A stretch of 63,328 nucleotides of DNA, counting the filler, from Octopus bimaculoides (taxonomy: Eukaryota): assembly GCF_001194135.2 (NCBI RefSeq). It is 7 parts of 6 records of this genome, joined end to end, with 100 filler letters (N's around TTAATTAATTAA, not from the genome) between each part and the next. Parts side by side here need not be neighbours in the genome. Positions count along the whole stretch, not along the records: positions 21,045 to 30,144 come from NC_068996.1; 6 more parts are not named here. One strand, 5' to 3'. Below, piece by piece: positions 2,150-30,144 of this stretch. The translations under genes were made by a program, and so were the position numbers. Below the pieces are notes generated by a model, which was not told where the DNA came from, made no database searches, and was given only the letters and a program-made list of their open reading frames with translations. The number at the start of each line of letters is the position of its first letter. The stretch's first letter is position 1.

Positions 2150-4080
2150 CATGAGAGATGTCATTTTACGTTGTCTACAGGTGAAGTGAAGTGTTATTTA
2201 CATAAGAGACGTAATGTTGAATTATCTACATGTGTAGTGAGGTGTTATACCAAGGTTTCATTGACAACATCCAATGCCAGTGCAACAACTGCCCTTTCCC
2301 CATCTCACGACTCTTCCGTTGTCTGACATTAGAACATAATAAATGCTGAATGCAAAATAAATTAAAATTTCAGTTTTCTTCCAGGCCCTAAGACCACAAC
2401 TATACCGATTGTTCTTATTTTCGTTTTTGGGATAGTGGATCTCTAAGCACATTAAGCTATAAATAATAGCATATAAATATTGGATCGAAAACCCCTTTAA
2501 AAGAGAAGTCGAAAGCTGCTCGTGAGACTCGAACTCACATCTCTTGTAGATATGACAAGCGTTCTATCAGTGGATAAAAGTAATCCTTCGAATTTCTTTA
2601 TCTATTTTAGAAACTTCAATCTTACCAGTGTTACCACTCTTTAGAGAGTATGTGAAATAATCATTTTCTGAAAGAGTGAATCTCGAAGCACGTAAAGCTA
2701 TAAATAATCTTTTTGTTTTTTACTTTAGTACAACGCCAGCAATTTTGAGTGGGTAGGGAAATCGATTACCTTTGGCCTTACACTGAAATAAAAAATACAT
2801 GCTTTATAGCTTTATACTTTAAAATTTTTTCTCCCACTTATTTTAATGGCCCAAATCTTTCAATTCCTGAAAAACTAAGCTGGCGTAACAAATCCCCTTT
2901 TATAGTTAGCAGAGACAGGACAACCAGCTTGTTTTAGTGTATGAGATTTTTCCTCTGGGATTTTCCATATGCTTCAACTCTTGAGACTTAAGGCTAACTT
3001 TTTGTACCATATTCTATTTAATTTCCGCAGTCTTTTCGTTTAGTAGTGTTTATTTAGTTAAATGACCTACCCCTTGGTTTTGTTATTATAAAGTAATTTA
3101 TTCAACGAGTAATTTAGAATTTACTTGTTACTTCAAGCCACTCAACATAATAAAATAGACTAATTTCTTGGTTCAAAATGTTAGCCCAAAACAGTAAAGT
3201 AACATGACATACATCAACGTGGATACAATAACATAAAGCACTGCCTATTAGAAGCAGTGTCAACCGTGGTATTTACCATCGCTATTTTATAAAATACCAA
3301 ATTACAGAAAACACAATTCTACATCAGAAGTTGTAGGTGCAGAAGTAGTAGTAGTTGTGTGAAAGAGAAAAAGAGAGTGAGAGAAAGAGAGAGAGATGGC
3401 TAATATACATATCAATTGAATGATACTTGTTATTGTAATATTTTTTTACGTATATTAACAGATGGCCCCGTATATATATATATATATATATATATNNNNN
3501 NNNNNNNNNNNNNNNNNNNNNNNNNNNNNNNNNNNNNNNNNNNNNNNNNNNNNNNNNNNNNNNNNNNNNNNNNNNNNNNNNNNNNNNNNNNNNNNNNNNN
3601 NNNNNNNNNNNNNNNNNNNNNNNNNNNNNNNNNNNNNNNNNNNNNNNNNNNNNNNNNNNNNNNNNNNNNNNNNNNNNNNNNNNNNNNNNNNNNNNNNNNN
3701 NNNNNNNNNNNNNNNNNNNNNNNNNNNNNNNNNNNNNNNNNNNNNNNNNNNNNNNNNNNNNNNNNNNNNNNNNNNNNNNNNNNNNNNNNNNNNNNNNNNN
3801 NNNNNNNNNNNNNNNNNNNNNNNNNNNNNNNNNNNNNNNNNNNNNNNNNNNNNNNNNNNNNNNNNNNNNNNNNNNNNNNNNNNNNNNNNNNNNNNNNNNN
3901 NNNNNNNNNNNNNNNNNNNNNNNNNNNNNNNNNNNNNNNNNNNNNNNNNNNNNNNNNNNNNNNNNNNNNNNNNNNNNNNNNNNNNNNNNNNNNNNNNNNN
4001 NNNNNNNNNNNNNNNNNNNNNNNNNNNNNNNNNNNNNNNNNNNNNNNNNNNNNNNNNNNNNNNNNNNNNNNNNNNNNNNN

Positions 4081-6215
4081 ATTTGTACCAAAGTTGATCT
4101 GGATTTGACAATCCACAGTTCACCAGCATGATGGAGAAGAGGTTTCTCAGCTGCATAGGAGACTTGCACATTTGTGCCTCTGTCAGAGTGGCATCCCAGT
4201 GTGCATCATCTTCCAGAAGACCTCTGAGATGGCATGCCAGATGATATGTTTGACATACTGTGTTATCAACCGTACGTAAGGCTGTAAATGATGTGGGTCC
4301 CTTGATATAGTGTAATAGAAACCTTAGATAGTAGAACTCTGAGTAGTTGGGATGAACAACATAGACTCTGCCAAGTGTGTCTGATTTCTTGATTCCTGGA
4401 TGAAGTGTGGGTGCTCCAAGTGCACGTTTTTTCCATTTGTTTTGGCACCAGGTATGGAATTGTGGAACTTCATTGTATAGTAGTGTTGTAGCAAATTCAT
4501 CATCTTGACAGGGCTTGAAGAATACTGAGAGCGTGGCATTTTTGTGAGCTTCCATTTGTAGTTGGATTGTGTCTGGGATGAAGTAAACCCTTTCGCCATT
4601 CTCCAAATGAACTGCAAGATGTTGCACGTGGGGTTATCTCTCATGAATGGGGAACCTGAGGATTCACCAACATGCTTCACCACTGCTGATATACCTTCAC
4701 ATTTGGAAGGTCTTGATTTTAGCATTGTTCTCTGAATCCTGGACTGCAAAGACTGCCATATCAGATCTCGTGTTGACATATTTGTATACATACTTAATGG
4801 GTTTCACTGAGTTACAGAACTCAACATTGATGTGTGCGTTGAATATCTTGGAGAGGAGGGGACAGTATGGTTCTCTCCACCTGTTGGCAACTGGAATTTC
4901 AGTTTAACATAACTTCTTGATGGTGGTTCCAAACCCATCATCATTTGGCCTTCTTCTTCTGTAGAGTGGATAACCATCATGTCCAGTCTGTGTCTCTTGA
5001 AGAAATTTCTTTGGAAAGCCTTTTGTACACTTTCTATCTTGCATGCATGGAGCATGTAAGTTGATATTCCAACATGGACCATGAAGAGTTCTGGATCTTC
5101 TGAGGATCTGGAATCTCTGCACTGATGAATTTATCTATTATCCTGGCATGGATTTAGTCTATAAGCCAGAGCAGGGTGTGTACATGAGGAAGTCCACGTT
5201 TCTGCTACTCTATTGTATACATGTGACATCTAGTGGCACCAAACGCTTTATCTTTGGTCAGTAACTGCATGAGCTTGATAACCTTCTGCCTGAAGACCCT
5301 TGCAATTATGTCATGTCTATCTTTAGGCTGTTGGTTTGAGAAGAGTTCATTTTGAATCTCTTTCCATTTAGGAAAGAGATTCAAAATGTGAAGGTTATGA
5401 AGAGGTCTGGTCTGAAGTAGTGTCTAACATATGCCGTGACATCTTGTGTGTGCTCATGCATGTATTTTGGGCTTCCTGTGAATGATGATAGAAGGATGAT
5501 CAGCTGACCCATGTTGTTGACATCATGATCATACAACATTGCATCTTGCAGGTGTGCATATGATTCCACACTCAGTTTCTTCTGGTTCAGTCTCAAGTAG
5601 AGTAATCGTTCACTTTCAATTTATGCATACATGTCAACAATGAACTGACTGAACAGATCTCTACAATGTAGGATGTGGTTTGAATCTTAACCCTTGATGT
5701 GGAATGCATAGAAGTCATTGGATGAAACTCGCTTTGAGGAGATTGTCTGTCTAATGTCAATGTGGTAAGTATCATGTCCATAACAGAACAGCAATGGATA
5801 TTGTAGTGCATCATAGGATCTGTGTGTTTATGAAATCCCCATCAGTGTGCTGCCTCTGAGATGGAGGACAATATCACATTTGTCATGTTCTTGCCCAACC
5901 AGAAGCACAGCTATTTCAGATGCCGTTGGCGCATTAACCTTCCCTCCACGTTGACCAGATTGTTTCTTGTCTGATCTGATAACTACCTTGTAATCCATGG
6001 AGTCGGGTGGAATTGCCTCAAGCGCTGTCTTGAAGCTTCTGATCAGGTTGTTGTTGTAATGCAGCATCTTTTGCAGAGATACTACAATGTTCATCCTGAT
6101 GCCGGACATGTTCTTGCATTTCTCTTGCCCTTCTTGTTGAGAATCATCCATAAAATATATTTGAAGGAATTTTGGTGATTCATTAGACAGCTGTCTCTCT
6201 TTCCCTGGCTAGAGA
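4081..6215 (-). mobile_element. Helitron Rep/helicase pseudogene fragment (Rep domain region, many stops and frameshifts; runs into N-gap)
   Basis: Minus-strand translations give Helitron RepHel motifs in the expected order: PKFLQIYF (~6170), NAPTASEIAVLL..DIVL, RPDLFITFT (~5390), HUH motif IE*QKRGLPHVH (~5165-5215), HGPC..APCMQDRKCTKGFPK, GYPLYRRR, LAVHLENGERVYF, GRVYVVHP..EFYYLRFLLHYIKGPTSFTALRTV. Confidence 0.93.
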
Positions 6216-21044: not shown

Positions 21045-21592
21045 CGTAATGTAAATTACAGCTTTTGCGTTTTATTCCTTCTCACAGTTGGCTTGTCAGC
21101 CCAGTTAGTTTCGCTAGACCCCAGTGTTGAACCCAATCCTGGGCCAATGGATTTCCTACCATTCAAATATGAATCAGAAATTGAGAAATTGACATTTCTA
21201 TCAGTGAAAATACTTAATCGTTTTCGTGCTAAAATCAACAGCCATTTATCATTTCTGGAAACATGCAAACAAGAAAAAGTTAAACCGGATGGTCTTACAT
21301 CAAATATACCAATATGTACATCAAAGCCTGACAACTCATTGCTTCAAAAGTTTAAATCAATTGGTGAGAGCAATTCATTTAACATAATGGAAGCTATCAT
21401 TGAACACTATCGTTCAAAATTAATATTGCTTCGTGCAAGCATTAAGGAGATTTCGAGTGTCCTTGAAAAGGTATGTTCTTCTAAAAATCGTTTGAACTTT
21501 TTGTGTAACTGTTTGATGAACTTTGAAAAAATGGAAATTTCGGCCCTGAAGAAAAGAAGCTGAAAAAGCTGATTTCTCATTCTCCTGAGCCA

Positions 21593-22130
21593 GTGGGCAA
21601 GGGAACATTTTGGTTGATAAGATTTGCTTTGAAATATGAGAAGTCGTTTTTACTTTCAGGACAAATGTTATGTGATAAACTCATTGATGCCGGATTGAAA
21701 ATCGTAACGGAAAATTTTCCAGAAATTTCAATACAACCACACATTTTTTCTCACACGGAATTTCTAACATACAATCCACACCGCACACTGTTTATCCATC
21801 ACACCAGGAACAATCATTTTGTTTTATCAACAATTTTTTTTGGAGATGTTTATATTTATGACAGTTTGAATTTACAAGTTTCGCAGGAACTAACGGCAGA
21901 AATAACAACGTTGTATTCACCACAAACAGACATTATTCCTACAATTCAACAAGTTCATATAATTAATCCCCAAGTTGGCGCATATGATTGTGGCCTTTTT
22001 GCCCTGGCGTATGCATTTGAACTGGTCATTGGAAATGCTCCAGAGAAGTTTCTATTCGATCAGTCAAAAATGCGAGCACATTTAAGATTTTGCCTCGAAA
22101 ACAATAAATTTGTTCCTTTCCCGAAAGTAA
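21593..22130 (+). pseudogene. Ulp1/SENP-like (peptidase C48) cysteine protease domain inside the PLE ORF
   Basis: RNNHFVL (His 21815-21817), IYDSLN (Asp 21860-21862), QVGAYDCGLFALAYA (oxyanion Gln; Cys 21989-21991), and FDQSKMRAHLRFCLENNKFVPFP. The frame is open over 301 codons. Confidence 0.85.
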
Positions 22131-22901
22131 AAGTTTTTCAAATGTCTACAAAAACCACAGAAGTCACTAACTGTCTATCACCCACTCAGAAATGGATTAC
22201 CCTTAGAAAGACGACTAAAAATTATAACTTCTCACATGAACATTCAGAACAAATTTTACCACCCAATAGGTTCCGCGTTTTAAGTGAAGATTTCGAGCAA
22301 AGCCCAAAAAGTAGTCAGGAATCTAATGAGAAAAAGACTCTGAAAACCACTTGCCCGAGAAAAAACATCACACTAGAGAATAAGTCGGTTATAAATTTAT
22401 CTAAACTAAAACTTTCGCGCGACGATGTCTCAGTCTTAGAGCTTGGACTGAGTTTTTGCCCAAGCACTAAGAGTTTCGACAAGAATAAACTAGCTTAAGG
22501 GCTATTTCAGTTTGTCCGCCGCCACAAGCTGAAAGAATATCTTTTTGAAAAAACTGGTAACGAGGAGTTAGAAAACCCTATGTTTACTAAAAATGATGAT
22601 GATCGAAATTGGCATAATTAGATTGAAAAGAATCCCAATTGGTATCCAGATAAAGTTCGGGATGGACGTTCACAAGCACTACTGGAATTTCTTGAATCTT
22701 GTGAGGATAAAACGGATTTGTACTGACATAGGGGATTACTGGAAACATGCAAATGCTTTTGTATGTCATTATGTCAAACGCGGTTACAGTGACTCACGAT
22801 TAAAAGGAATAGCAAATGAAATAGCTAAGATTAGCAAAGATAGTCAAACCTACACGCATAATTTTAGTAAACACAATACAATAGATGACAGAATTCCTTG
22901 A

Positions 22902-23439
22902 GTGATTAGCTGGCACCGACATTTCGCTGGCATTTCAAAAGTGTTGCATGAAAGTTACCAGCATGTGGCGAAAAAATATCCCAGTTTCAAACAGATATTT
23001 CCTCAGCCGCCTATTGTAACCTTTAGACGGAATAAGAATATAAGAGAATTATTAACCTCTATATCTGACTCCAAGAAAACGAACGTTGGAATATCTGCAC
23101 GATGTACCTTAAAGAACAGCCGCAAGAGAGATAAGCCCTGTTCATTGTGCAACAACATGAGTGAAGTGAATTCCATCAGAAATCATAACAGAAATGTTAT
23201 GATTTATACAGAAGATGGAACATGTAAAGATTCCCATTTGGTGTACGCTGCAGAATGCACGAAACACAGCTTAATTTATGTTGGTTGTGCAACAGAACGA
23301 TTAAACAAAAGATTTAATGGGCACAGATTCGATGTCAGGCACAATTACAGTAGTTCGACAGAACTTACTAAACATTTCATTTCAAGCGGCTGCAATTTTG
23401 AAGAAGACTTGAAAATGCATATTCTCAGAAAATATTCTG
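22902..23439 (+). pseudogene. GIY-YIG endonuclease region of the PLE
   Basis: PIVTFRRNKNIRELL, CSLC, LVYAAEC, IYVG, R..F.GHR..V, L..HF; preceded by an in-frame TGA at 22899-22901 and cut by an N-gap. Confidence 0.88.
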
Positions 23440-24033
23440 NNNNNNNNNNNNNNNNNNNNNNNNNNNNNNNNNNNNNNNNNNNNNNNNNNNNNNNNNNNNN
23501 NNNNNNNNNNNNNNNNNNNNNNNNNNNNNNNNNNNNNNNNNNNNNNNNNNNNNNNNNNNNNNNNNNNNNNNNNNNNNNNNNNNNNNNNNNNNNNNNNNNN
23601 NNNNNNNNNNNNNNNNNNNNNNNNNNNNNNNNNNNNNNNNNNNNNNNNNNNNNNNNNNNNNNNNNNNNNNNNNNNNNNNNNNNNNNNNNNNNNNNNNNNN
23701 NNNNNNNNNNNNNNNNNNNNNNNNNNNNNNNNNNNNNNNNNNNNNNNNNNNNNNNNNNNNNNNNNNNNNNNNNNNNNNNNNNNNNNNNNNNNNNNNNNNN
23801 NNNNNNNNNNNNNNNNNNNNNNNNNNNNNNNNNNNNNNNNNNNNNNNNNNNNNNNNNNNNNNNNNNNNNNNNNNNNNNNNNNNNNNNNNNNNNNNNNNNN
23901 NNNNNNNNNNNNNNNNNNNNNNNNNNNCGTACTGTTGAAATATCGTTCAACTAATAAAATATCTTACAATCGAATCACGCTCCTTGTTTTGACTGTTTAC
24001 CTTTGTAAAGAGTTACGTCAATCCTTTTAAAAA

Positions 24034-24034
<1 letters not shown>

Positions 24035-24073
<39 letters not shown>

Positions 24074-26694: not shown

Positions 26695-26800
26695 TTCGCT
26701 GTTGTTGTTGTTGTTGTTGTTGTTCTTCTTCTTCTTATTCTTCTTCTTCTTCTTCTTCTTCTTCTTCTTCTTCTTCTTCTTCTTCTTCCTCCTCCTGTTG

Positions 26801-26862
<62 letters not shown>

Positions 26863-26895
26863 GCTACTACAACCGTCGCCACTGCTGCTGCTGTA
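26695..26895. repeat. Compound trinucleotide array (GTT)n(CTT)n(CCT)n(CTA)n
   Basis: Directly visible; it produces the poly-L/F/T/R ORFs in the track. Confidence 0.97.

Positions 26896-27393: not shown

Positions 27394-27395
<2 letters not shown>
26905..27395 (+). mobile_element. L1/Tx1-like LINE 3' end (ORF2 C-terminus plus T-rich 3' UTR)
   Basis: FLCLMVVAKGVVWWTKL..FKFHMKNKLRVERE..EFIERR resembles the Tx1-type ORF2 C-terminus; followed by a T-rich UTR and (AAT)n. Confidence 0.6.
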
Positions 27396-27443
<48 letters not shown>

Positions 27444-27469
27444 TAATGATGATGATGATGATGATGATG

Positions 27470-27513
<44 letters not shown>

Positions 27514-27538
27514 AATAATAATAATAATTATTATTATT

Positions 27539-27799: not shown

Positions 27800-28725
27800 T
27801 TATTTGCTGGGTATGGTGGAAAGTATCAGCTGTCCACAGCCAGTAGACTAAGGTGACATTTGTTTACTTGTCATGCTCGAAGAATCCCGCGAAGAATTCT
27901 TGCAGTTCCAAGCAATGCTGATTTTCGTAGGTGTTCTACCTTTACATTTGTACCAATCTTTTGGAGCCCTGTTGATAGTTGGGTGCTGACACTTCCAGGT
28001 GCGTCAATTAGTATCGGTATCACTTCTACTCTCCTCATTGACCACAACCTTCGTATTTCCCACTTTAAGTCGTTGTAGTTGTGCAGTTTTTCTTCTTTCT
28101 CTTTGATCATGTTGCCACTGGGACATGCTACGTCGATTACCATGCATGTTCTTTCTGATGACAAAGATCTCCCAAAGTCTCTTCTCACGATACTTAACAT
28201 CTAGGTACCAATCTCCTCACTCTCCTCAATAAATCTGAGTATGTTCTGCGCTCATGTCAATTACAATTTCTCCAACAAATTTCTCAAATCTGGTTGTTAA
28301 TGCTCCCAATGCCTCAACAACTAACGAGATGACAGTTACTTTTCCGTTGTCTACATTCGTGCAATCTCATCTTGTACTTCTCAATCTTTTCCAGTTCTTT
28401 ATCAGTCACGCGTATTGCCATCCCCAGGTATCGCAATATCTATGATCTTGGTTTCCTTCATCATTTTATCTACTACAGCAATGTCTGATCTCCGAGCATC
28501 AATCACCGAATCACACTGGTTTGTAAAATCCCTCAAGATTTTAACCTCATTATTCTCGGTGATACCTTCTGGTTTATGCTCGTACCAATTCAATTTTATC
28601 TGCTACAACAATGTCTGGTCTCCGAAAACCAATCACTTAATCACGCTGGACTGTCAAATAACTCAGGATTTTATACTCATTATTCTCAGTAAAGCCTTCT
28701 GGTTTCAATGTCCTTTTAATTATTA
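27800..28725 (-). mobile_element. Stacked R4/Dong-like LINE 3' fragments (RLE domain)
   Basis: HKPEGITENNEVKILRDF..RRSDIAVVD..IIDIAIPGD (28400-28590), a diverged duplicate of that segment (28600-28710), and VIDVACP..KLHNYNDLKWEIRRLWS..IP..KSALLGTARILRGIL (27871-28170). Confidence 0.88.
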
Positions 28726-29263
28726 TTATTGCTAATCGTAACTCGTCGCTACACCGCCGAGTAACGACGTAGTCAAGATGAAATAGATCCTTCAGCAGAA
28801 ACATAATACAACGATCACATTGATATACTCAACTACCAAACCTGCTTTTTTTCTTGAGGCAGATTTTAATTCGATATTTCACACACACGATCATCATCAT
28901 CGTAATCATCATCAACATCAACAACGACGACAACGACAGCAAGAACAAGAACAACAACAACAATAACAACAACCTGTCATTATAGTGAACGTCATTTTTT
29001 AAAGTCTGTGTTGCTTTCTCTGTATGCTGAAAGACGTACAGAAACGCACGCACACATACACACATACACACACGCGCACGCCCACACAGATACATACACG
29101 CACACACACAAACAGATGCATGCACACATACACACACACAAGCAGCCAAGAGAAAGTTAACTATGTATAATATATATACATGTGGTTATTTTTTTGAAGC
29201 CTGTGTCACGTTGTGTTGACAAACTTGCACTTAAAAATTTGTTAGTAGCTACTGTGACAATAC

Positions 29264-29498
29264 TACCTACCTACCTACCTACCTACCTACCTGCCTGGCT
29301 GCCTGCCTGGCTGCCTGCCTGGCTGCCTGCCTGGCTGCCTGCCTGGCTGCCTGCCTGGCTGCCTGCCTGGCTGCCTGCCTGGCTGCCTGCCTGGCTGCCT
29401 GCCTGGCTGCCTGCCTGGCTGGCTGCCTGGCTGCCTGGCTGCCTGGCTGCCTGGCTGCCTGGCTGCCTGGCTGCCTGCCTGCCTGCCTGCCTGCCTGC

Positions 29499-29568
<70 letters not shown>

Positions 29569-29585
29569 CAGTCTGTCTGTCTATC
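29264..29585. repeat. Compound tetranucleotide array with a 12-bp higher-order unit (GCCTGGCTGCCT)n
   Basis: (CTAC)n, then 12-mer and 8-mer CTGC/CTGG arrays, then (CTAT)n. Confidence 0.95.
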
Positions 29586-29759
29586 TATTATAAACACACT
29601 CTTTCACTCACTCACTGTATTTCTCTCTCAACAACTTTTCCTCTTCACCTTCTAAATATATGTTGTAAAAGGGATTATCTCCCATTTTGATCTCTCCCCT
29701 TCTTCCCTTCATCTAATACATGTCGTGACAGATGGAGATCAATTTCTCATTTTTATAAG

Positions 29760-30144
29760 ATTATTATTACTATTATTGTTTTATGTTTGACTTTTGTTTT
29801 GCATTTGTACAAGTTGGATCCAACTCTCACCCAGAGACCTCAAGAGACAACAAGTTAGAAGTTCATGTAGGTGTTATGCCTAGGGTACCATATATTTGGA
29901 TTTGTACAGTGTTGTTCTAGTGAAGGTTTAAGAAACCATAAGAAAATTATGTGTTTGCTTTAAAATTTGAGATCACATAGACAGTATTTTACGTAGGATA
30001 TGTGCAGTTCCCATGAGCACTATCTTTTGAACTTCAGCCATTTTAGGGTTTCCTGGTATCTGAGCTAGGTAGTAATCAGCCCGTTTCGCTGTCATTCCCA
30101 GGGCACCTATGACAATAGGTATTGTTTTCATCTTCAGATTCCAC
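29760..30144 (-). mobile_element. R4/Dong-like LINE 3' end
   Basis: WNLKMKTIPIVIGALGM..AEVQKIVLMGTAHILRKILSM*, then a 3' UTR ending in (TAA)-like repeats. Confidence 0.87.

What the first reader, a model, noticed from the sequence alone, without database searches (positions are those of the whole stretch)
21093..23439. Penelope-like retroelement with a built-in Ulp1/SUMO-protease-like domain
Seen: one ancestral ORF reads PLE N-terminal domain (HLSFLETC..VKPDGL), then KKLKKL after a single 1-nt frameshift near 21550, a C48/Ulp1-type protease with His (21815), Asp (21860), Gln and Cys (21989) all intact, the PLE pre-RT motif VINLS..LELGLSFCP, an RT remnant and GIY-YIG. The protease sits between two PLE-specific motifs on the same strand with no visible TSD or TIR, so it looks like part of the element. 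Established: Ulp1-like proteases occur in NeSL LINEs and some DNA transposons, whereas canonical PLEs encode only RT and GIY-YIG. I do not recall a described Ulp1-PLE lineage. Inference: a PLE lineage captured a deSUMOylase or deubiquitinase-like domain, perhaps for polyprotein processing or to counter SUMO-dependent silencing.
Basis: partly seen in the sequence, partly recalled or inferred. Interest (0 to 1): 0.82.

Follow-up and report, generated by a model that had tools for sequence, protein, structure and literature searches.

The report
Penelope-like retroelement carrying Ulp1-like protease
This is a dead, internally deleted copy of a jumping gene of the Penelope class, from a lineage that, unlike any Penelope-like element described in the papers I could search, has a SUMO-protease-like cysteine protease built into its single long reading frame between its two usual protein modules.

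Summary
Window 21045-23439 (+) is a decayed Penelope-like element (PLE), probably from Octopus bimaculoides. The stated catalytic codons are exact: His 21815, Asp 21860, Gln 21971, Cys 21989.

The copy is dead. It has one frameshift, four in-frame stops and a deletion of about 384 codons of the RT core. An N-run truncates it at the 3' end.

The protease is not a nested insertion. Profile searches find intact single ORFs of 1187-1553 aa with the same order: leader, 2A-like NPGP motif, PLE ORF1-type N-domain, protease, pre-RT motifs, RT, GIY-YIG. One occurs as two tandem intact copies. All but one of these ORFs fall in a single RT clade. H, D, Q and C are invariant.

Pfam Peptidase_C48 misses the window sequence. 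However, the family profile reaches relatives that pass the C48 threshold, and the AlphaFold model matches SENP5, Ulp1 and SENP1/2.

Two canonical relatives keep ORF1 in a separate frame and have no protease. I therefore favour processing of a fused ORF1-protease-ORF2 polyprotein, with SUMO/ubiquitin-like deconjugation as a close rival. Neither was tested.

No searchable paper pairs PLEs with Ulp1/C48. Repbase and Dfam could not be checked.

The parts
21045..21113 (+). End of the N-terminal leader. It is a hydrophobic stretch (FCVLFLLTVGLSAQLVS). The frame is open to the piece's edge, so the start of the ORF is cut off.
   Evidence: Translation. It aligns with the hydrophobic segment that precedes the NPGP motif in full-length relatives.
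21114..21146 (+). 2A-like (StopGo-type) motif, LDPSVEPNPGP.
   Evidence: Coordinates. The column pattern DPx[VI]ExNPGP is conserved in all 10 aligned full-length ORFs and in P0415, and in loci L001 and L002. Ribosome-skipping activity was not tested.
21147..21560 (+). PLE ORF1-type N-domain, with HLSFLETC at 21243-21266 and VKPDGL at 21279-21296. Frame 0.
   Evidence: tblastn with P0013 aa 40-203. The same motif (xHxxFLxxC...P.GL) occurs in the separate upstream ORF1 of the canonical PLE loci L006 and L007.
21530..21563 (+). Frameshift from frame 0 to frame 2, consistent with loss of 1 nt. It lies in an A-rich basic stretch. KKLKKL follows at 21554-21571.
   Evidence: Relatives read through this K.KK motif in one frame.
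21608..22132 (+). Ulp1/SENP-like (clan CE, C48-type) cysteine protease domain. Catalytic codons: His 21815-21817, Asp 21860-21862, Gln 21971-21973, Cys 21989-21991. No stop codon inside.
   Evidence: Coordinates. AlphaFold model: pLDDT 78.8, pTM 0.80. Foldseek top hits SENP5, Ulp1, SENP2 and SENP1, E 5e-7 to 1e-4. Family profile against PDB: SENP5 E 0.04. H/D/Q/C invariant in relatives.
22187..22282 (+). Post-protease junction with two conserved short motifs: QKWITLRK (consensus KWxxPK) at 22187-22210 and NRFRVL (consensus NRFxPL) at 22265-22282.
   Evidence: Conserved columns and constant spacing in full-length ORFs: protease Q-x-DCG to KW is 67-75 aa, KW to NRF is 22-27 aa. Canonical ORF2s start near an NRRF-like motif.
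22388..22723 (+). Pre-RT PLE motifs N1-N3: VINLS..LELGLSFCP, FxFVRRHKLKEYLF and NPNWYP. This region corresponds to Pfam DUF8422 in relatives. It is interrupted by stops at 22496-22498 and 22619-22621 and ends at the stop at 22724-22726.
   Evidence: Relatives carry a precomputed PF28514/DUF8422 hit over this region. N1-N3 are named as PLE motifs in PMC8557442.
22698..22726 (+). Deletion junction. About 384 codons are missing (DKG motif plus the RT core, equal to P0013 aa 602-985), with a change from frame 2 to frame 0.
   Evidence: tblastn map.
22725..23102 (+). Post-RT thumb/linker region (DYWKHANAFVCHYVKRGYS...). In-frame stop at 22899-22901.
   Evidence: tblastn with P0013 aa 986-1219. Relatives carry PF26215 HTH_animal here.
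23103..23150 (+). Cys-rich linker, C-x11-C-x2-C, upstream of the endonuclease.
   Evidence: L002 has C-x4-C-x2-C. PMC8557442 gives CX2-5CxxC as typical of the Neptune and Nematis clades. This assignment is by motif only.
23238..23439 (+). GIY-YIG endonuclease domain, N-terminal half (LVYAAEC...LIYVGCA...). It is truncated by the N-run at 23440-23927.
   Evidence: Pfam GIY-YIG E 6.3e-4, 20.4 bits, below the 22.6 cut-off. Relatives pass the cut-off: P0023 30.3 bits, P0029 29.2, P0013 24.8.

Best explanation
IDENTITY (well supported). The finding is a dead copy of a canonical, C-terminal-endonuclease Penelope-like retroelement. It belongs to a lineage whose single ORF reads, in order:
- a short leader
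- a 2A-like NPGP motif
- the PLE ORF1-type coiled-coil N-domain
- a basic K.KK stretch
- a Ulp1/SENP-like clan-CE cysteine protease
- a KWxxPK/NRFxPL junction followed by a variable low-complexity spacer
- pre-RT motifs N1-N3
- RT and thumb
- a Cys linker
- GIY-YIG

The window copy lost its RT core, acquired one frameshift and four stops, and cannot move on its own.

MECHANISM (inferred, not shown). Two canonical relatives examined here encode ORF1 and ORF2 in different frames. This lineage fused them and placed a protease between them, much as PR sits between gag and pol. I propose three steps:
1. The leader is separated co-translationally at NPG|P.
2. The catalytically competent protease then cuts the ORF1-protease-ORF2 polyprotein, in cis or in trans. 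This releases the ORF1-like protein from the RT-endonuclease.
3. The cuts are not at classical Gly-Gly sites.

A second activity on host SUMO or ubiquitin-like conjugates is not excluded.
For: Architecture is lineage-wide:
- Relatives at 37-41% identity share protease plus pre-RT motifs. L003 has N-domain, protease and N1 in one open 457-codon frame. L004 has protease, DUF8422, RT and GIY-YIG with a single frameshift.
- The profile search gave 9621 representatives at E<=1e-3 and 254 at E<=1e-30. These include intact ORFs of 1187-1461 aa with the protease at about aa 215-400 plus RVT_1 and GIY-YIG.
- A 1553-aa ORF occurs as two tandem intact copies spaced 5482 bp apart (a 300-nt stretch compared was 100% identical) and sits in a >=90%-identity cluster of 75 members.
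- The RT neighbour-joining tree puts all protease-bearing ORFs except P0070 in one clade.

Protease identity and activity:
- H, D, Q and C are invariant in every PLE-linked representative where the column is present: 28/28, 28/28, 32/32 and 31/31.
- Foldseek top hits are SENP5, Ulp1, SENP2 and SENP1, and viral Ulp-like proteases.
- Relatives matched by the family profile pass the Pfam Peptidase_C48 threshold: P0019 at 49.3 bits, P0153 at 32.3, P0087 at 26.8.
- A 77%-identical Octopus bimaculoides paralogue is named 'Ubiquitin-like protease family profile domain-containing protein' by UniProt.

Processing reading:
- The canonical loci L006 and L007 have the same N-domain as a separate upstream ORF1, in another frame, with no protease. 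This agrees with the Fig. 1 legend of PMC8557442, which says ORF1 can be separated by a frameshift.
- All 11 intact protease-bearing ORFs examined have ORF1 fused in frame.
- The position equivalent to Ulp1 Trp448 is never Trp in PLE-linked proteases (0/24), against 95/173 in other relatives. The position after the catalytic His is Phe in 19/28. This argues for a changed substrate.
- From established knowledge: clan-CE proteases mature polyproteins in adenoviruses, ASFV and poxviruses.
Against: - No cleavage was observed, and no cleavage site was identified.
- There is no Gly-Gly at any module border. In 5 of 11 ORFs there is no GG at all upstream of the DKG motif.
- The conserved border motifs (K.KK, KWxxPK, NRFxPL) are not known CE-protease sites. 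They could instead be nuclear-localisation or nucleic-acid-binding motifs.
- The best structural matches are deconjugating enzymes, not processing proteases. Adenain ranks only 41st.
- The closest sequence relatives outside PLEs are Ulp1-like proteins with a PHD finger, which hints at chromatin.
- Only two canonical loci were inspected for ORF1 framing.
- P0070 lies outside the main clade in an unbootstrapped NJ tree, so the history may involve more than one acquisition.
- No hammerhead ribozyme was found.
- Host taxa are known only for Octopus.
Confidence: 0.5

Rival explanations
1. The protease is a SUMO/ubiquitin-like deconjugating enzyme aimed at host proteins. After nuclear import with the RT-endonuclease, it would strip SUMO or a related modifier from chromatin or silencing factors. 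That could counter SUMO-dependent transposon silencing or help integration.
For: - Top fold matches are SENP5, Ulp1, SENP2, SENP1 and SENP3.
- Profile hits in PDB are SENP5, SENP1 and a Ulp1-like SUMO protease.
- The closest non-PLE sequence relatives combine this domain with a PHD finger, a chromatin reader.
- Basic NLS-like stretches flank the domain.
- From established knowledge: SUMO is required for several transposon-silencing pathways.
Against: - Two Trp residues clamp the SUMO Gly-Gly tail in Ulp1/SENPs (equivalence shown). In PLE-linked proteases the first is never Trp (0/24) and the second is mostly Phe (19/28). The PHD-linked relatives keep both.
- This reading does not explain why ORF1 is fused in frame only where the protease is present.
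- No substrate assay was possible.
Confidence: 0.33
2. The domain is catalytically irrelevant to transposition. It would be a structural or binding module (for example a SUMO- or ubiquitin-binding scaffold), or a YopJ-like acetyltransferase rather than a protease.
For: - Weak Pfam hits of some relatives to YopJ acetyltransferase: P0004 E 0.0033, P0010 E 2.4e-4.
- PopP2 and AvrA appear among the fold matches.
- The Trp clamp is lost.
Against: - Strict invariance of His, Asp, Gln and Cys across representatives that are at most 50% identical indicates selection on catalysis.
- SENP/Ulp1 matches outrank the YopJ-family ones, with better TM-scores and rmsd.
- The YopJ Pfam scores are all below the cut-off.
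Confidence: 0.1
3. The protease in the window is a one-off: a nested insertion, a chimeric assembly, or a host Ulp1-like gene sitting next to PLE debris.
For: The window copy is degraded. It lies next to a 488-N scaffold gap, and its 5' end is cut by the piece's edge, so target-site duplications cannot be inspected. A gene model (P0001) spliced the locus as if it were a host gene.
Against: - The same order of modules occurs in uninterrupted ORFs on many independent contigs from different samples.
- The tblastn alignment of intact relatives is collinear across the window.
- The protease-bearing elements form an RT clade.
Confidence: 0.02

Closest known systems
Canonical C-terminal-endonuclease Penelope-like elements (Neptune / Nematis / Penelope-Poseidon clades; Arkhipova 2006; Craig et al. 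2021, PMC8557442)
   Same: - ORF1-type N-domain.
- Pre-RT motifs N1-N3 (DUF8422), PLE-type RT with the DKG motif, thumb (HTH_animal), and C-terminal GIY-YIG.
- A Cys linker of the CX2-5CxxC kind in the window's sub-lineage.
- Tandem head-to-tail copies.
   Different: - ORF1 and ORF2 are fused in one frame, with a Ulp1-like protease between them and a 2A-like leader in front. The canonical relatives L006 and L007 have a separate, frame-shifted ORF1, no protease, and (in L007) no NPGP motif.
- No hammerhead ribozyme was detected in five related loci.
[quoted passage not shown]
   Same: A Ulp1-like cysteine protease sits in the same ORF as a reverse transcriptase and an endonuclease. Its function in those elements is also unproven.
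   Different: - A different retroelement class: non-LTR RT with a restriction-like endonuclease, reported from nematodes.
- The protease there is at the N-terminus, not between an ORF1-like module and the RT.
- I did not compare the sequences. The acquisitions are presumably independent.
Chlamys-1_cBra, a Chara braunii PLE with weak homology to Josephin (PMC8557442)
   Same: It is the only PLE with a cysteine-protease-like accessory motif that I found in the literature.
   Different: - Josephin belongs to a different protease family.
- The motif lies in a C-terminal extension of an N-terminal-endonuclease PLE from a green alga.
- The homology is described as weak.
Ulp1 / SENP SUMO proteases (MEROPS C48, clan CE)
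   Same: - Same fold (Foldseek E down to 5e-7, TM 0.55-0.63).
- Same order of catalytic His, Asp, oxyanion Gln and Cys within the Q-x-x-x-DCG motif.
- The upstream L-x-D-x-x-I-D motif aligns with the Ulp1 motif W-L-N-D-x-I-I.
   Different: - The window protein does not reach the Pfam C48 model.
- The Trp448 equivalent is Met in the window and never Trp in PLE-linked members. The Trp515 equivalent is Phe.
- The domain is embedded in a transposon polyprotein.
Unnamed Ulp1-like + PHD-finger proteins of about 250-340 aa, abundant in eukaryotic and metagenomic assemblies
   Same: - They are the closest sequence relatives of the PLE protease outside PLEs: P0010 is 31% identical, and profile E-values reach about 1e-40.
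- They share the C-terminal DQSKMRxHLxxC...FP extension.
   Different: - They keep both clamp tryptophans.
- They pass Pfam Peptidase_C48.
- They end in a PHD finger and have no RT or endonuclease. Whether they are host genes or parts of other transposons is unknown.
2A-like (StopGo) peptides near the N-termini of APE-type non-LTR retrotransposon ORFs (Odon et al. 2013; PMC13405545)
   Same: An [VI]ExNPGP motif, preceded by a hydrophobic stretch, lies close to the N-terminus of a retrotransposon ORF.
   Different: - Here it is in a PLE, which those papers do not mention.
- The Asp sits two residues further upstream (DPx[VI]ExNPGP).
- Activity was not tested.
Clan-CE maturation proteases of adenoviruses (adenain), ASFV pS273R and poxvirus I7 (recalled knowledge)
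   Same: Clan-CE cysteine proteases encoded by a mobile or viral genome that process that genome's own polyproteins. They are the functional analogy for the favoured mechanism.
   Different: - Those enzymes cut at Gly-Gly-type sites, and none is present at the module borders here.
- Adenain is only a distant structural match, at rank 41 with E 8e-4.

Membership tests
Penelope-like elements, canonical EN+ type | PLE-type reverse transcriptase (DKG motif plus RT motifs 1-7) | tested here: not met
   In the window copy the RT core is deleted (tblastn gap, P0013 aa 602-985). In the lineage it is present: Pfam RVT_1 in P0013, P0023, P0038 and P0070, with E 1e-12 to 4e-9, and a P[AS]DKG motif. So the window is a defective member of the lineage.
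Penelope-like elements, canonical EN+ type | Conserved pre-RT motifs N1-N3 | tested here: met
   VINLS..LELGLSFCP, FxFVRRHKLKEYLF and NPNWYP at 22388-22648 align column for column with the full-length ORFs. Relatives carry PF28514/DUF8422.
Penelope-like elements, canonical EN+ type | C-terminal GIY-YIG endonuclease | tested here: met
   Window: Pfam GIY-YIG E 6.3e-4, 20.4 bits. This is just under the 22.6 cut-off, and the domain is truncated by the N-run. Relatives exceed the cut-off at 24.8-30.3 bits.
Penelope-like elements, canonical EN+ type | Cys-rich linker (CX2-5CxxC) and CCHH motif around GIY-YIG (Neptune/Nematis type) | tested here: inconclusive
   The window has C-x11-C-x2-C at 23103-23150. 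L002 has C-x4-C-x2-C. P0013 and P0023 lack the motif. Only one Cys lies between GIY and YIG in the window. No reference sequences were available for a proper comparison.
Penelope-like elements, canonical EN+ type | Pseudo-LTRs / partial tandem insertions | tested here: inconclusive
   This cannot be seen in the window, because of the piece edge at 21045 and the N-run at 23440. Related loci do show tandem copies: L005, unit 5482 bp, and L002, where the 3' end of another copy sits directly upstream.
Penelope-like elements, canonical EN+ type | Hammerhead ribozyme motif near the ends | tested here: not met
   No Rfam hammerhead was found in the window piece or in L001-L005, even at E<=1. There is no CUGANGA...GAAA core in L005. 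The window's 3' end is missing. PMC8557442 notes that some PLE clades lack canonical hammerheads.
Peptidase C48 (Ulp1/SENP), clan CE | Catalytic His, Asp, Cys with oxyanion Gln, in that order | tested here: met
   His 21815, Asp 21860, Gln 21971, Cys 21989. These are invariant in PLE-linked representatives.
Peptidase C48 (Ulp1/SENP), clan CE | Match to Pfam PF02902 at or above the gathering score | tested here: not met
   There was no hit for the window protein at E<=1 and none for seven full-length relatives at E<=0.01. P0006 scored 16.2 bits, below the 20.7 cut-off. The feature is met only transitively. Relatives found by the family profile pass: P0019 49.3 bits, P0153 32.3, P0087 26.8, P0010 26.2. 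Many hits also have a precomputed PF02902 match.
Peptidase C48 (Ulp1/SENP), clan CE | Ulp1-type fold | tested here: met
   AlphaFold2 model: pLDDT 78.8, pTM 0.80. Foldseek against PDB: SENP5 5e-7, Ulp1 2.4e-6, then SENP2 and SENP1; 45 hits at E<=1e-3, apparently all clan CE among the listed hits.
Peptidase C48 (Ulp1/SENP), clan CE | Two tryptophans that clamp the Gly-Gly tail (Ulp1 W448 and W515; recalled knowledge) | tested here: not met
   The window has Met and Phe at these positions. PLE-linked proteases have Trp at the first position in 0/24 and at the second in 7/28. Column equivalence comes from the P0019-Ulp1 alignment.
Peptidase C48 (Ulp1/SENP), clan CE | SUMO (or other ubiquitin-like) isopeptidase / precursor-processing activity | not testable with these tools
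   This needs enzyme assays.
2A / StopGo peptides | C-terminal D(V/I)ExNPGP motif after a helical or hydrophobic stretch | tested here: inconclusive
   [VI]ExNPGP is present and conserved. The Asp is displaced by two residues (DPx[VI]E). Activity cannot be tested with these tools.
NeSL/Utopia Ulp1-bearing non-LTR retrotransposons | Non-LTR RT with a C-terminal restriction-like endonuclease | tested here: not met
   The endonuclease here is GIY-YIG, and the RT relatives are PLE-type with DUF8422.

The most novel reading that the evidence does not exclude
A widespread lineage of animal Penelope-like retroelements encodes an active SUMO/ubiquitin-like deconjugase. It carries this enzyme into the nucleus to dismantle SUMO-dependent transposon silencing or to remodel chromatin at the integration site. 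That would make it a transposon-encoded anti-silencing enzyme. The same lineage would combine this with 2A ribosome skipping and a gag-PR-pol-like single-ORF expression strategy, not previously reported for this retroelement class in the papers I could search.
Probability: 0.25. Interest if true: 0.85.

Novelty: new variant of a known kind. Interest (0 to 1): 0.62.

Why it matters
PLEs are textbook 'RT plus GIY-YIG only' elements and the sister group of telomerase RT. This lineage adds a conserved, apparently active clan-CE protease and a 2A-like signal, and it fuses ORF1 with ORF2. That would mean PLEs independently arrived at a polyprotein expression strategy like that of retroviruses, or alternatively that they carry an enzyme aimed at the host's SUMO/ubiquitin-like system.

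Either outcome can be tested with intact natural copies. Either would also shed light on other Ulp1-bearing transposons, such as NeSL/Utopia and Cryptons (and MULEs, from recollection), whose protease function I am not aware of having been established.

There is also a practical point. Genome annotators currently call fragments of these elements host 'ubiquitin-like protease' genes, as with the Octopus bimaculoides entries.

Tried and rejected
- Pfam on the three translated segments gave no protease family, even at E<=1. Only a weak GIY-YIG hit appeared.
- phmmer of the protease against PDB sequences gave nothing at E<=10. A profile was needed, and even then E was only 0.04.
- Hammerhead ribozymes were sought with Rfam at the gathering and E<=1 thresholds on the window piece and L001-L005, and with a core-motif regex on L005. 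None was found.
- Host taxonomy was sought from cluster members and source names. Nearly all relatives come from unnamed ENA, JGI or Logan contigs. Only Octopus bimaculoides is named for the protease. Clytia, Oculina, Branchiostoma, Ixodes and Ylistrum are named for RT relatives whose protease status is unknown or absent.
- The sister RT clade (P0297-P0320) could not be scored for the protease. The one contig fetched starts 116 nt upstream of the ORF.
- A search for Gly-Gly cleavage sites at the module borders found none.
- dN/dS between Octopus copies was not possible, because no DNA was available for the paralogue P0002.
- The one-off nested-insertion reading and the host-gene reading were rejected for the reasons given under rival explanations.
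- Literature searches pairing Penelope with Ulp1, Peptidase_C48, C48, ubiquitin-like protease, cysteine protease or 2A-like returned nothing relevant. The only exception was the Josephin-like motif in a Chara PLE.


Full report
**What is in the window**

The piece 21045-23439 was translated in three frames. It reads as one ancestral ORF on the + strand.
- Frame 0 is open from the piece's edge to 21560. It contains a hydrophobic stretch, the motif LDPSVEPNPGP (21114-21146), HLSFLETC (21243-21266) and VKPDGL (21279-21296).
- The frame changes within 21530-21563.
- Frame 2 then runs without a stop from about 21553 to 22495.
- Further along frame 2 come the motifs QKWITLRK and NRFRVL, then VINLS...LELGLSFCP.
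- In-frame stops follow at 22496, 22619 and 22724.
- From 22725 the sequence continues in frame 0 with a thumb-like region (stop at 22899), a C-x11-C-x2-C linker and the first half of a GIY-YIG domain. Pfam gives E 6.3e-4 for that domain. An N-run cuts it at 23440.

tblastn with an intact relative (P0013, 1260 aa) maps aa 40-203, 224-601 and 986-1219 collinearly onto the window. About 384 codons, the entire RT core, are therefore deleted near 22700-22725. The copy is dead.

A MetaClust gene model (P0001) is 100% identical to the locus. A 77%-identical paralogue is a UniProt entry of Octopus bimaculoides named 'Ubiquitin-like protease family profile domain-containing protein'. The window is therefore probably from that octopus.

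**Is the protease part of the element?**

Yes.
- The first homology search already returned proteins at 37-41% identity that join the protease to the pre-RT motifs and the RT.
- Locus L003 has N-domain, protease and N1 in one open 457-codon frame.
- Locus L004 has protease, DUF8422, RT, HTH_animal and GIY-YIG with a single frameshift.
- A profile of the protease domain, searched against 1.84 billion representatives, gave 9621 hits at E<=1e-3 and 254 at E<=1e-30. These include uninterrupted ORFs of 1187-1461 aa with the protease at about aa 215-400 followed by RVT_1 and GIY-YIG.
- A 1553-aa ORF lies twice, head to tail, on a Tara metagenome scaffold, with a unit of 5482 bp (a 300-nt stretch compared was 100% identical). 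It belongs to a >=90%-identity cluster of 75 sequences, which suggests a recently active family.
- In a neighbour-joining tree of the RT region, all protease-bearing ORFs except P0070 form one clade. Canonical PLE ORFs of about 750 aa lie elsewhere. The tree is midpoint-rooted and has no bootstrap, so it is rough.

**What the extra modules are**

An alignment of ten full-length ORFs plus the window shows a fixed order:
- a leader, M-DDLxxYRxRIGxF
- a hydrophobic segment
- DPx[VI]ExNPGP
- an N-domain with SHRxFLxxC...P.GL and a K.KK stretch
- the protease
- KWxxPK, then 22-27 residues later NRFxPL
- a variable low-complexity spacer
- N1-N3, DKG and the RT

Two canonical relatives were inspected (L006, L007). 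Each has the same N-domain motif (KHHISYLTKC...IPRSL and NHHRDFLKSH...TPRGL) in a separate upstream ORF1, in a different frame from ORF2. Neither has a protease, and L007 has no NPGP motif. This matches the published PLE scheme, in which ORF1 can be separated by a frameshift (PMC8557442).

The lineage found here is an in-frame ORF1-protease-ORF2 fusion with a 2A-like leader.

**Is the domain C48/Ulp1?**

The Pfam model misses the window protein and seven full-length relatives. phmmer against PDB also finds nothing. Four lines of evidence still place it in clan CE, next to C48:
1. The family profile's best PDB matches are SENP5 (E 0.04), SENP1 and a Ulp1-like SUMO protease. They align over His, Asp and the Q...DCG motif.
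2. Relatives that the profile finds at E about 1e-60 to 1e-30 pass Pfam Peptidase_C48: P0019 49.3 bits, P0153 32.3, P0087 26.8, P0010 26.2. Many more have a precomputed PF02902 match.
3. An AlphaFold2 model (pLDDT 78.8, pTM 0.80) matches SENP5, Ulp1, SENP2 and SENP1 at E 5e-7 to 1e-4 and TM 0.55-0.63. There are 45 hits at E<=1e-3, apparently all clan-CE proteins among the listed hits. It also matches viral Ulp-like proteases.
4. His, Asp, Gln and Cys are invariant in all PLE-linked representatives.

One difference stands out. In Ulp1/SENPs two tryptophans clamp the Gly-Gly tail; this is recalled knowledge, and the column equivalence is shown. At the first of these positions, PLE-linked proteases never have Trp (0/24), against 95/173 in other relatives. 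The residue after the catalytic His is Phe in 19/28.

**How it most likely works**

What is shown: the anatomy, the conservation and the fold.

What is inferred: the function. I favour processing of the fused polyprotein, for four reasons:
- The protease sits exactly where ORF1 and ORF2, normally in separate frames, have been joined.
- Every intact protease-bearing ORF examined has that fusion.
- The lineage already uses another device for separating proteins, the 2A-like motif.
- The loss of the Trp clamp argues against a classical SUMO Gly-Gly substrate.

Against this reading:
- No Gly-Gly is present at any border, and no cleavage site is identified.
- The nearest structures are deconjugases.
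- The closest non-PLE relatives carry PHD fingers.

The main rival, close in likelihood, is a SUMO/ubiquitin-like deconjugase that acts on host chromatin or silencing factors. The two readings are not mutually exclusive.

**Comparison with what is known**

Ulp1-like proteases are reported in NeSL and Utopia-1_TSP non-LTR elements (PMC4640811) and in oomycete Cryptons (PMC3212892). A motif with weak Josephin homology is reported in one Chara PLE (PMC8557442).

Five searches pairing Penelope with Ulp1, C48, ubiquitin-like protease or cysteine protease found no description of a Ulp1-bearing PLE.

2A-like peptides are described in APE-type non-LTR elements, but not in PLEs, in the papers I could read.

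Repbase and Dfam could not be searched. The sequences may therefore be catalogued there without comment.

**Verdict**

The window copy itself is a fossil, but it points to a diverse PLE lineage, partly intact, with an architecture not described in the searchable literature. I rate it a new variant of a known kind, of moderate to high interest to transposon biologists. The function of the protease is the open question.

Noticed in passing
window 21114-21146; also L002 about 5480-5512, L001 about 5170-5200, and all full-length ORFs examined: A 2A-like motif, DPx[VI]ExNPGP, follows a hydrophobic stretch and a conserved leader (M-DDLxxYRxRIGxF) at the very start of the ORF. I found no paper linking 2A-like peptides to Penelope-like elements. 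The canonical locus L007 lacks the motif.
   Followed up: partly
L006 3477-3929 and 3974-; L007 3471-4154 and 4001-: Canonical PLE relatives have an ORF1 in a different frame from ORF2. In L006, ORF1 ends ...PNVNRF* and ORF2 begins MKNRRF. The NRF motif thus marks the ORF1/ORF2 junction, and it reappears as NRFxPL downstream of the protease in the fused lineage. The L007 overlap, 4001-4154, would need a -1 shift.
   Followed up: partly
proteins P0010, P0087, P0153, P0061, P0172 and many hits: A very large family of proteins of about 250-340 aa combines this Ulp1-like domain with a C-terminal PHD finger. P0019 has two protease domains in tandem. P0099 adds a YqaJ-like exonuclease. P0123 and P0134 are gene models fused to polycystin channels. 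These could be the source of the PLE protease or parts of other transposons.
   Followed up: no
window 23440-23927: A run of 488 N (a scaffold gap) truncates the GIY-YIG domain. The element's 3' end, and any pseudo-LTR or hammerhead, cannot be examined in this copy.
   Followed up: yes
window 27871-28200 (-) and 29973-30131 (-): Two minus-strand ORF fragments end in similar peptides (...LLGTARILRGILRA and ...LMGTAHILRKILSM). They look like tails of another repeated element. Neither has a Pfam match.
   Followed up: partly
window 24034-24073, 26700-26870, 27394-27528, 28463-28705, 29037-29140, 29290-29588: The downstream 6 kb is dense in simple repeats: (TAT)13, (TTC)22, (CTA)23, (AAT)45, a 130-bp unit x1.9, CA-rich arrays, a 12-mer CCTGCCTGGCTG x17.6, and (CTAT)22.
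   Followed up: no
proteins P0354, P0382, P0404: JGI names some PLE RT fragments 'peptide-methionine (R)-S-oxide reductase'. This looks like an annotation error.
   Followed up: no
L001 1-3252 (-): Next to the PLE copy lies a non-LTR element whose ORFs hit Exo_endo_phos and RVT_1, with an upstream Lipase_GDSL_2 domain.
   Followed up: no
P0013, P0023, P0029 versus window, L001, L004, P0028, P0070: The Cys linker upstream of GIY-YIG (C...CxxC) is present in the window's sub-lineage and in P0070. It appears to be absent in several other protease-bearing sub-lineages.
   Followed up: no
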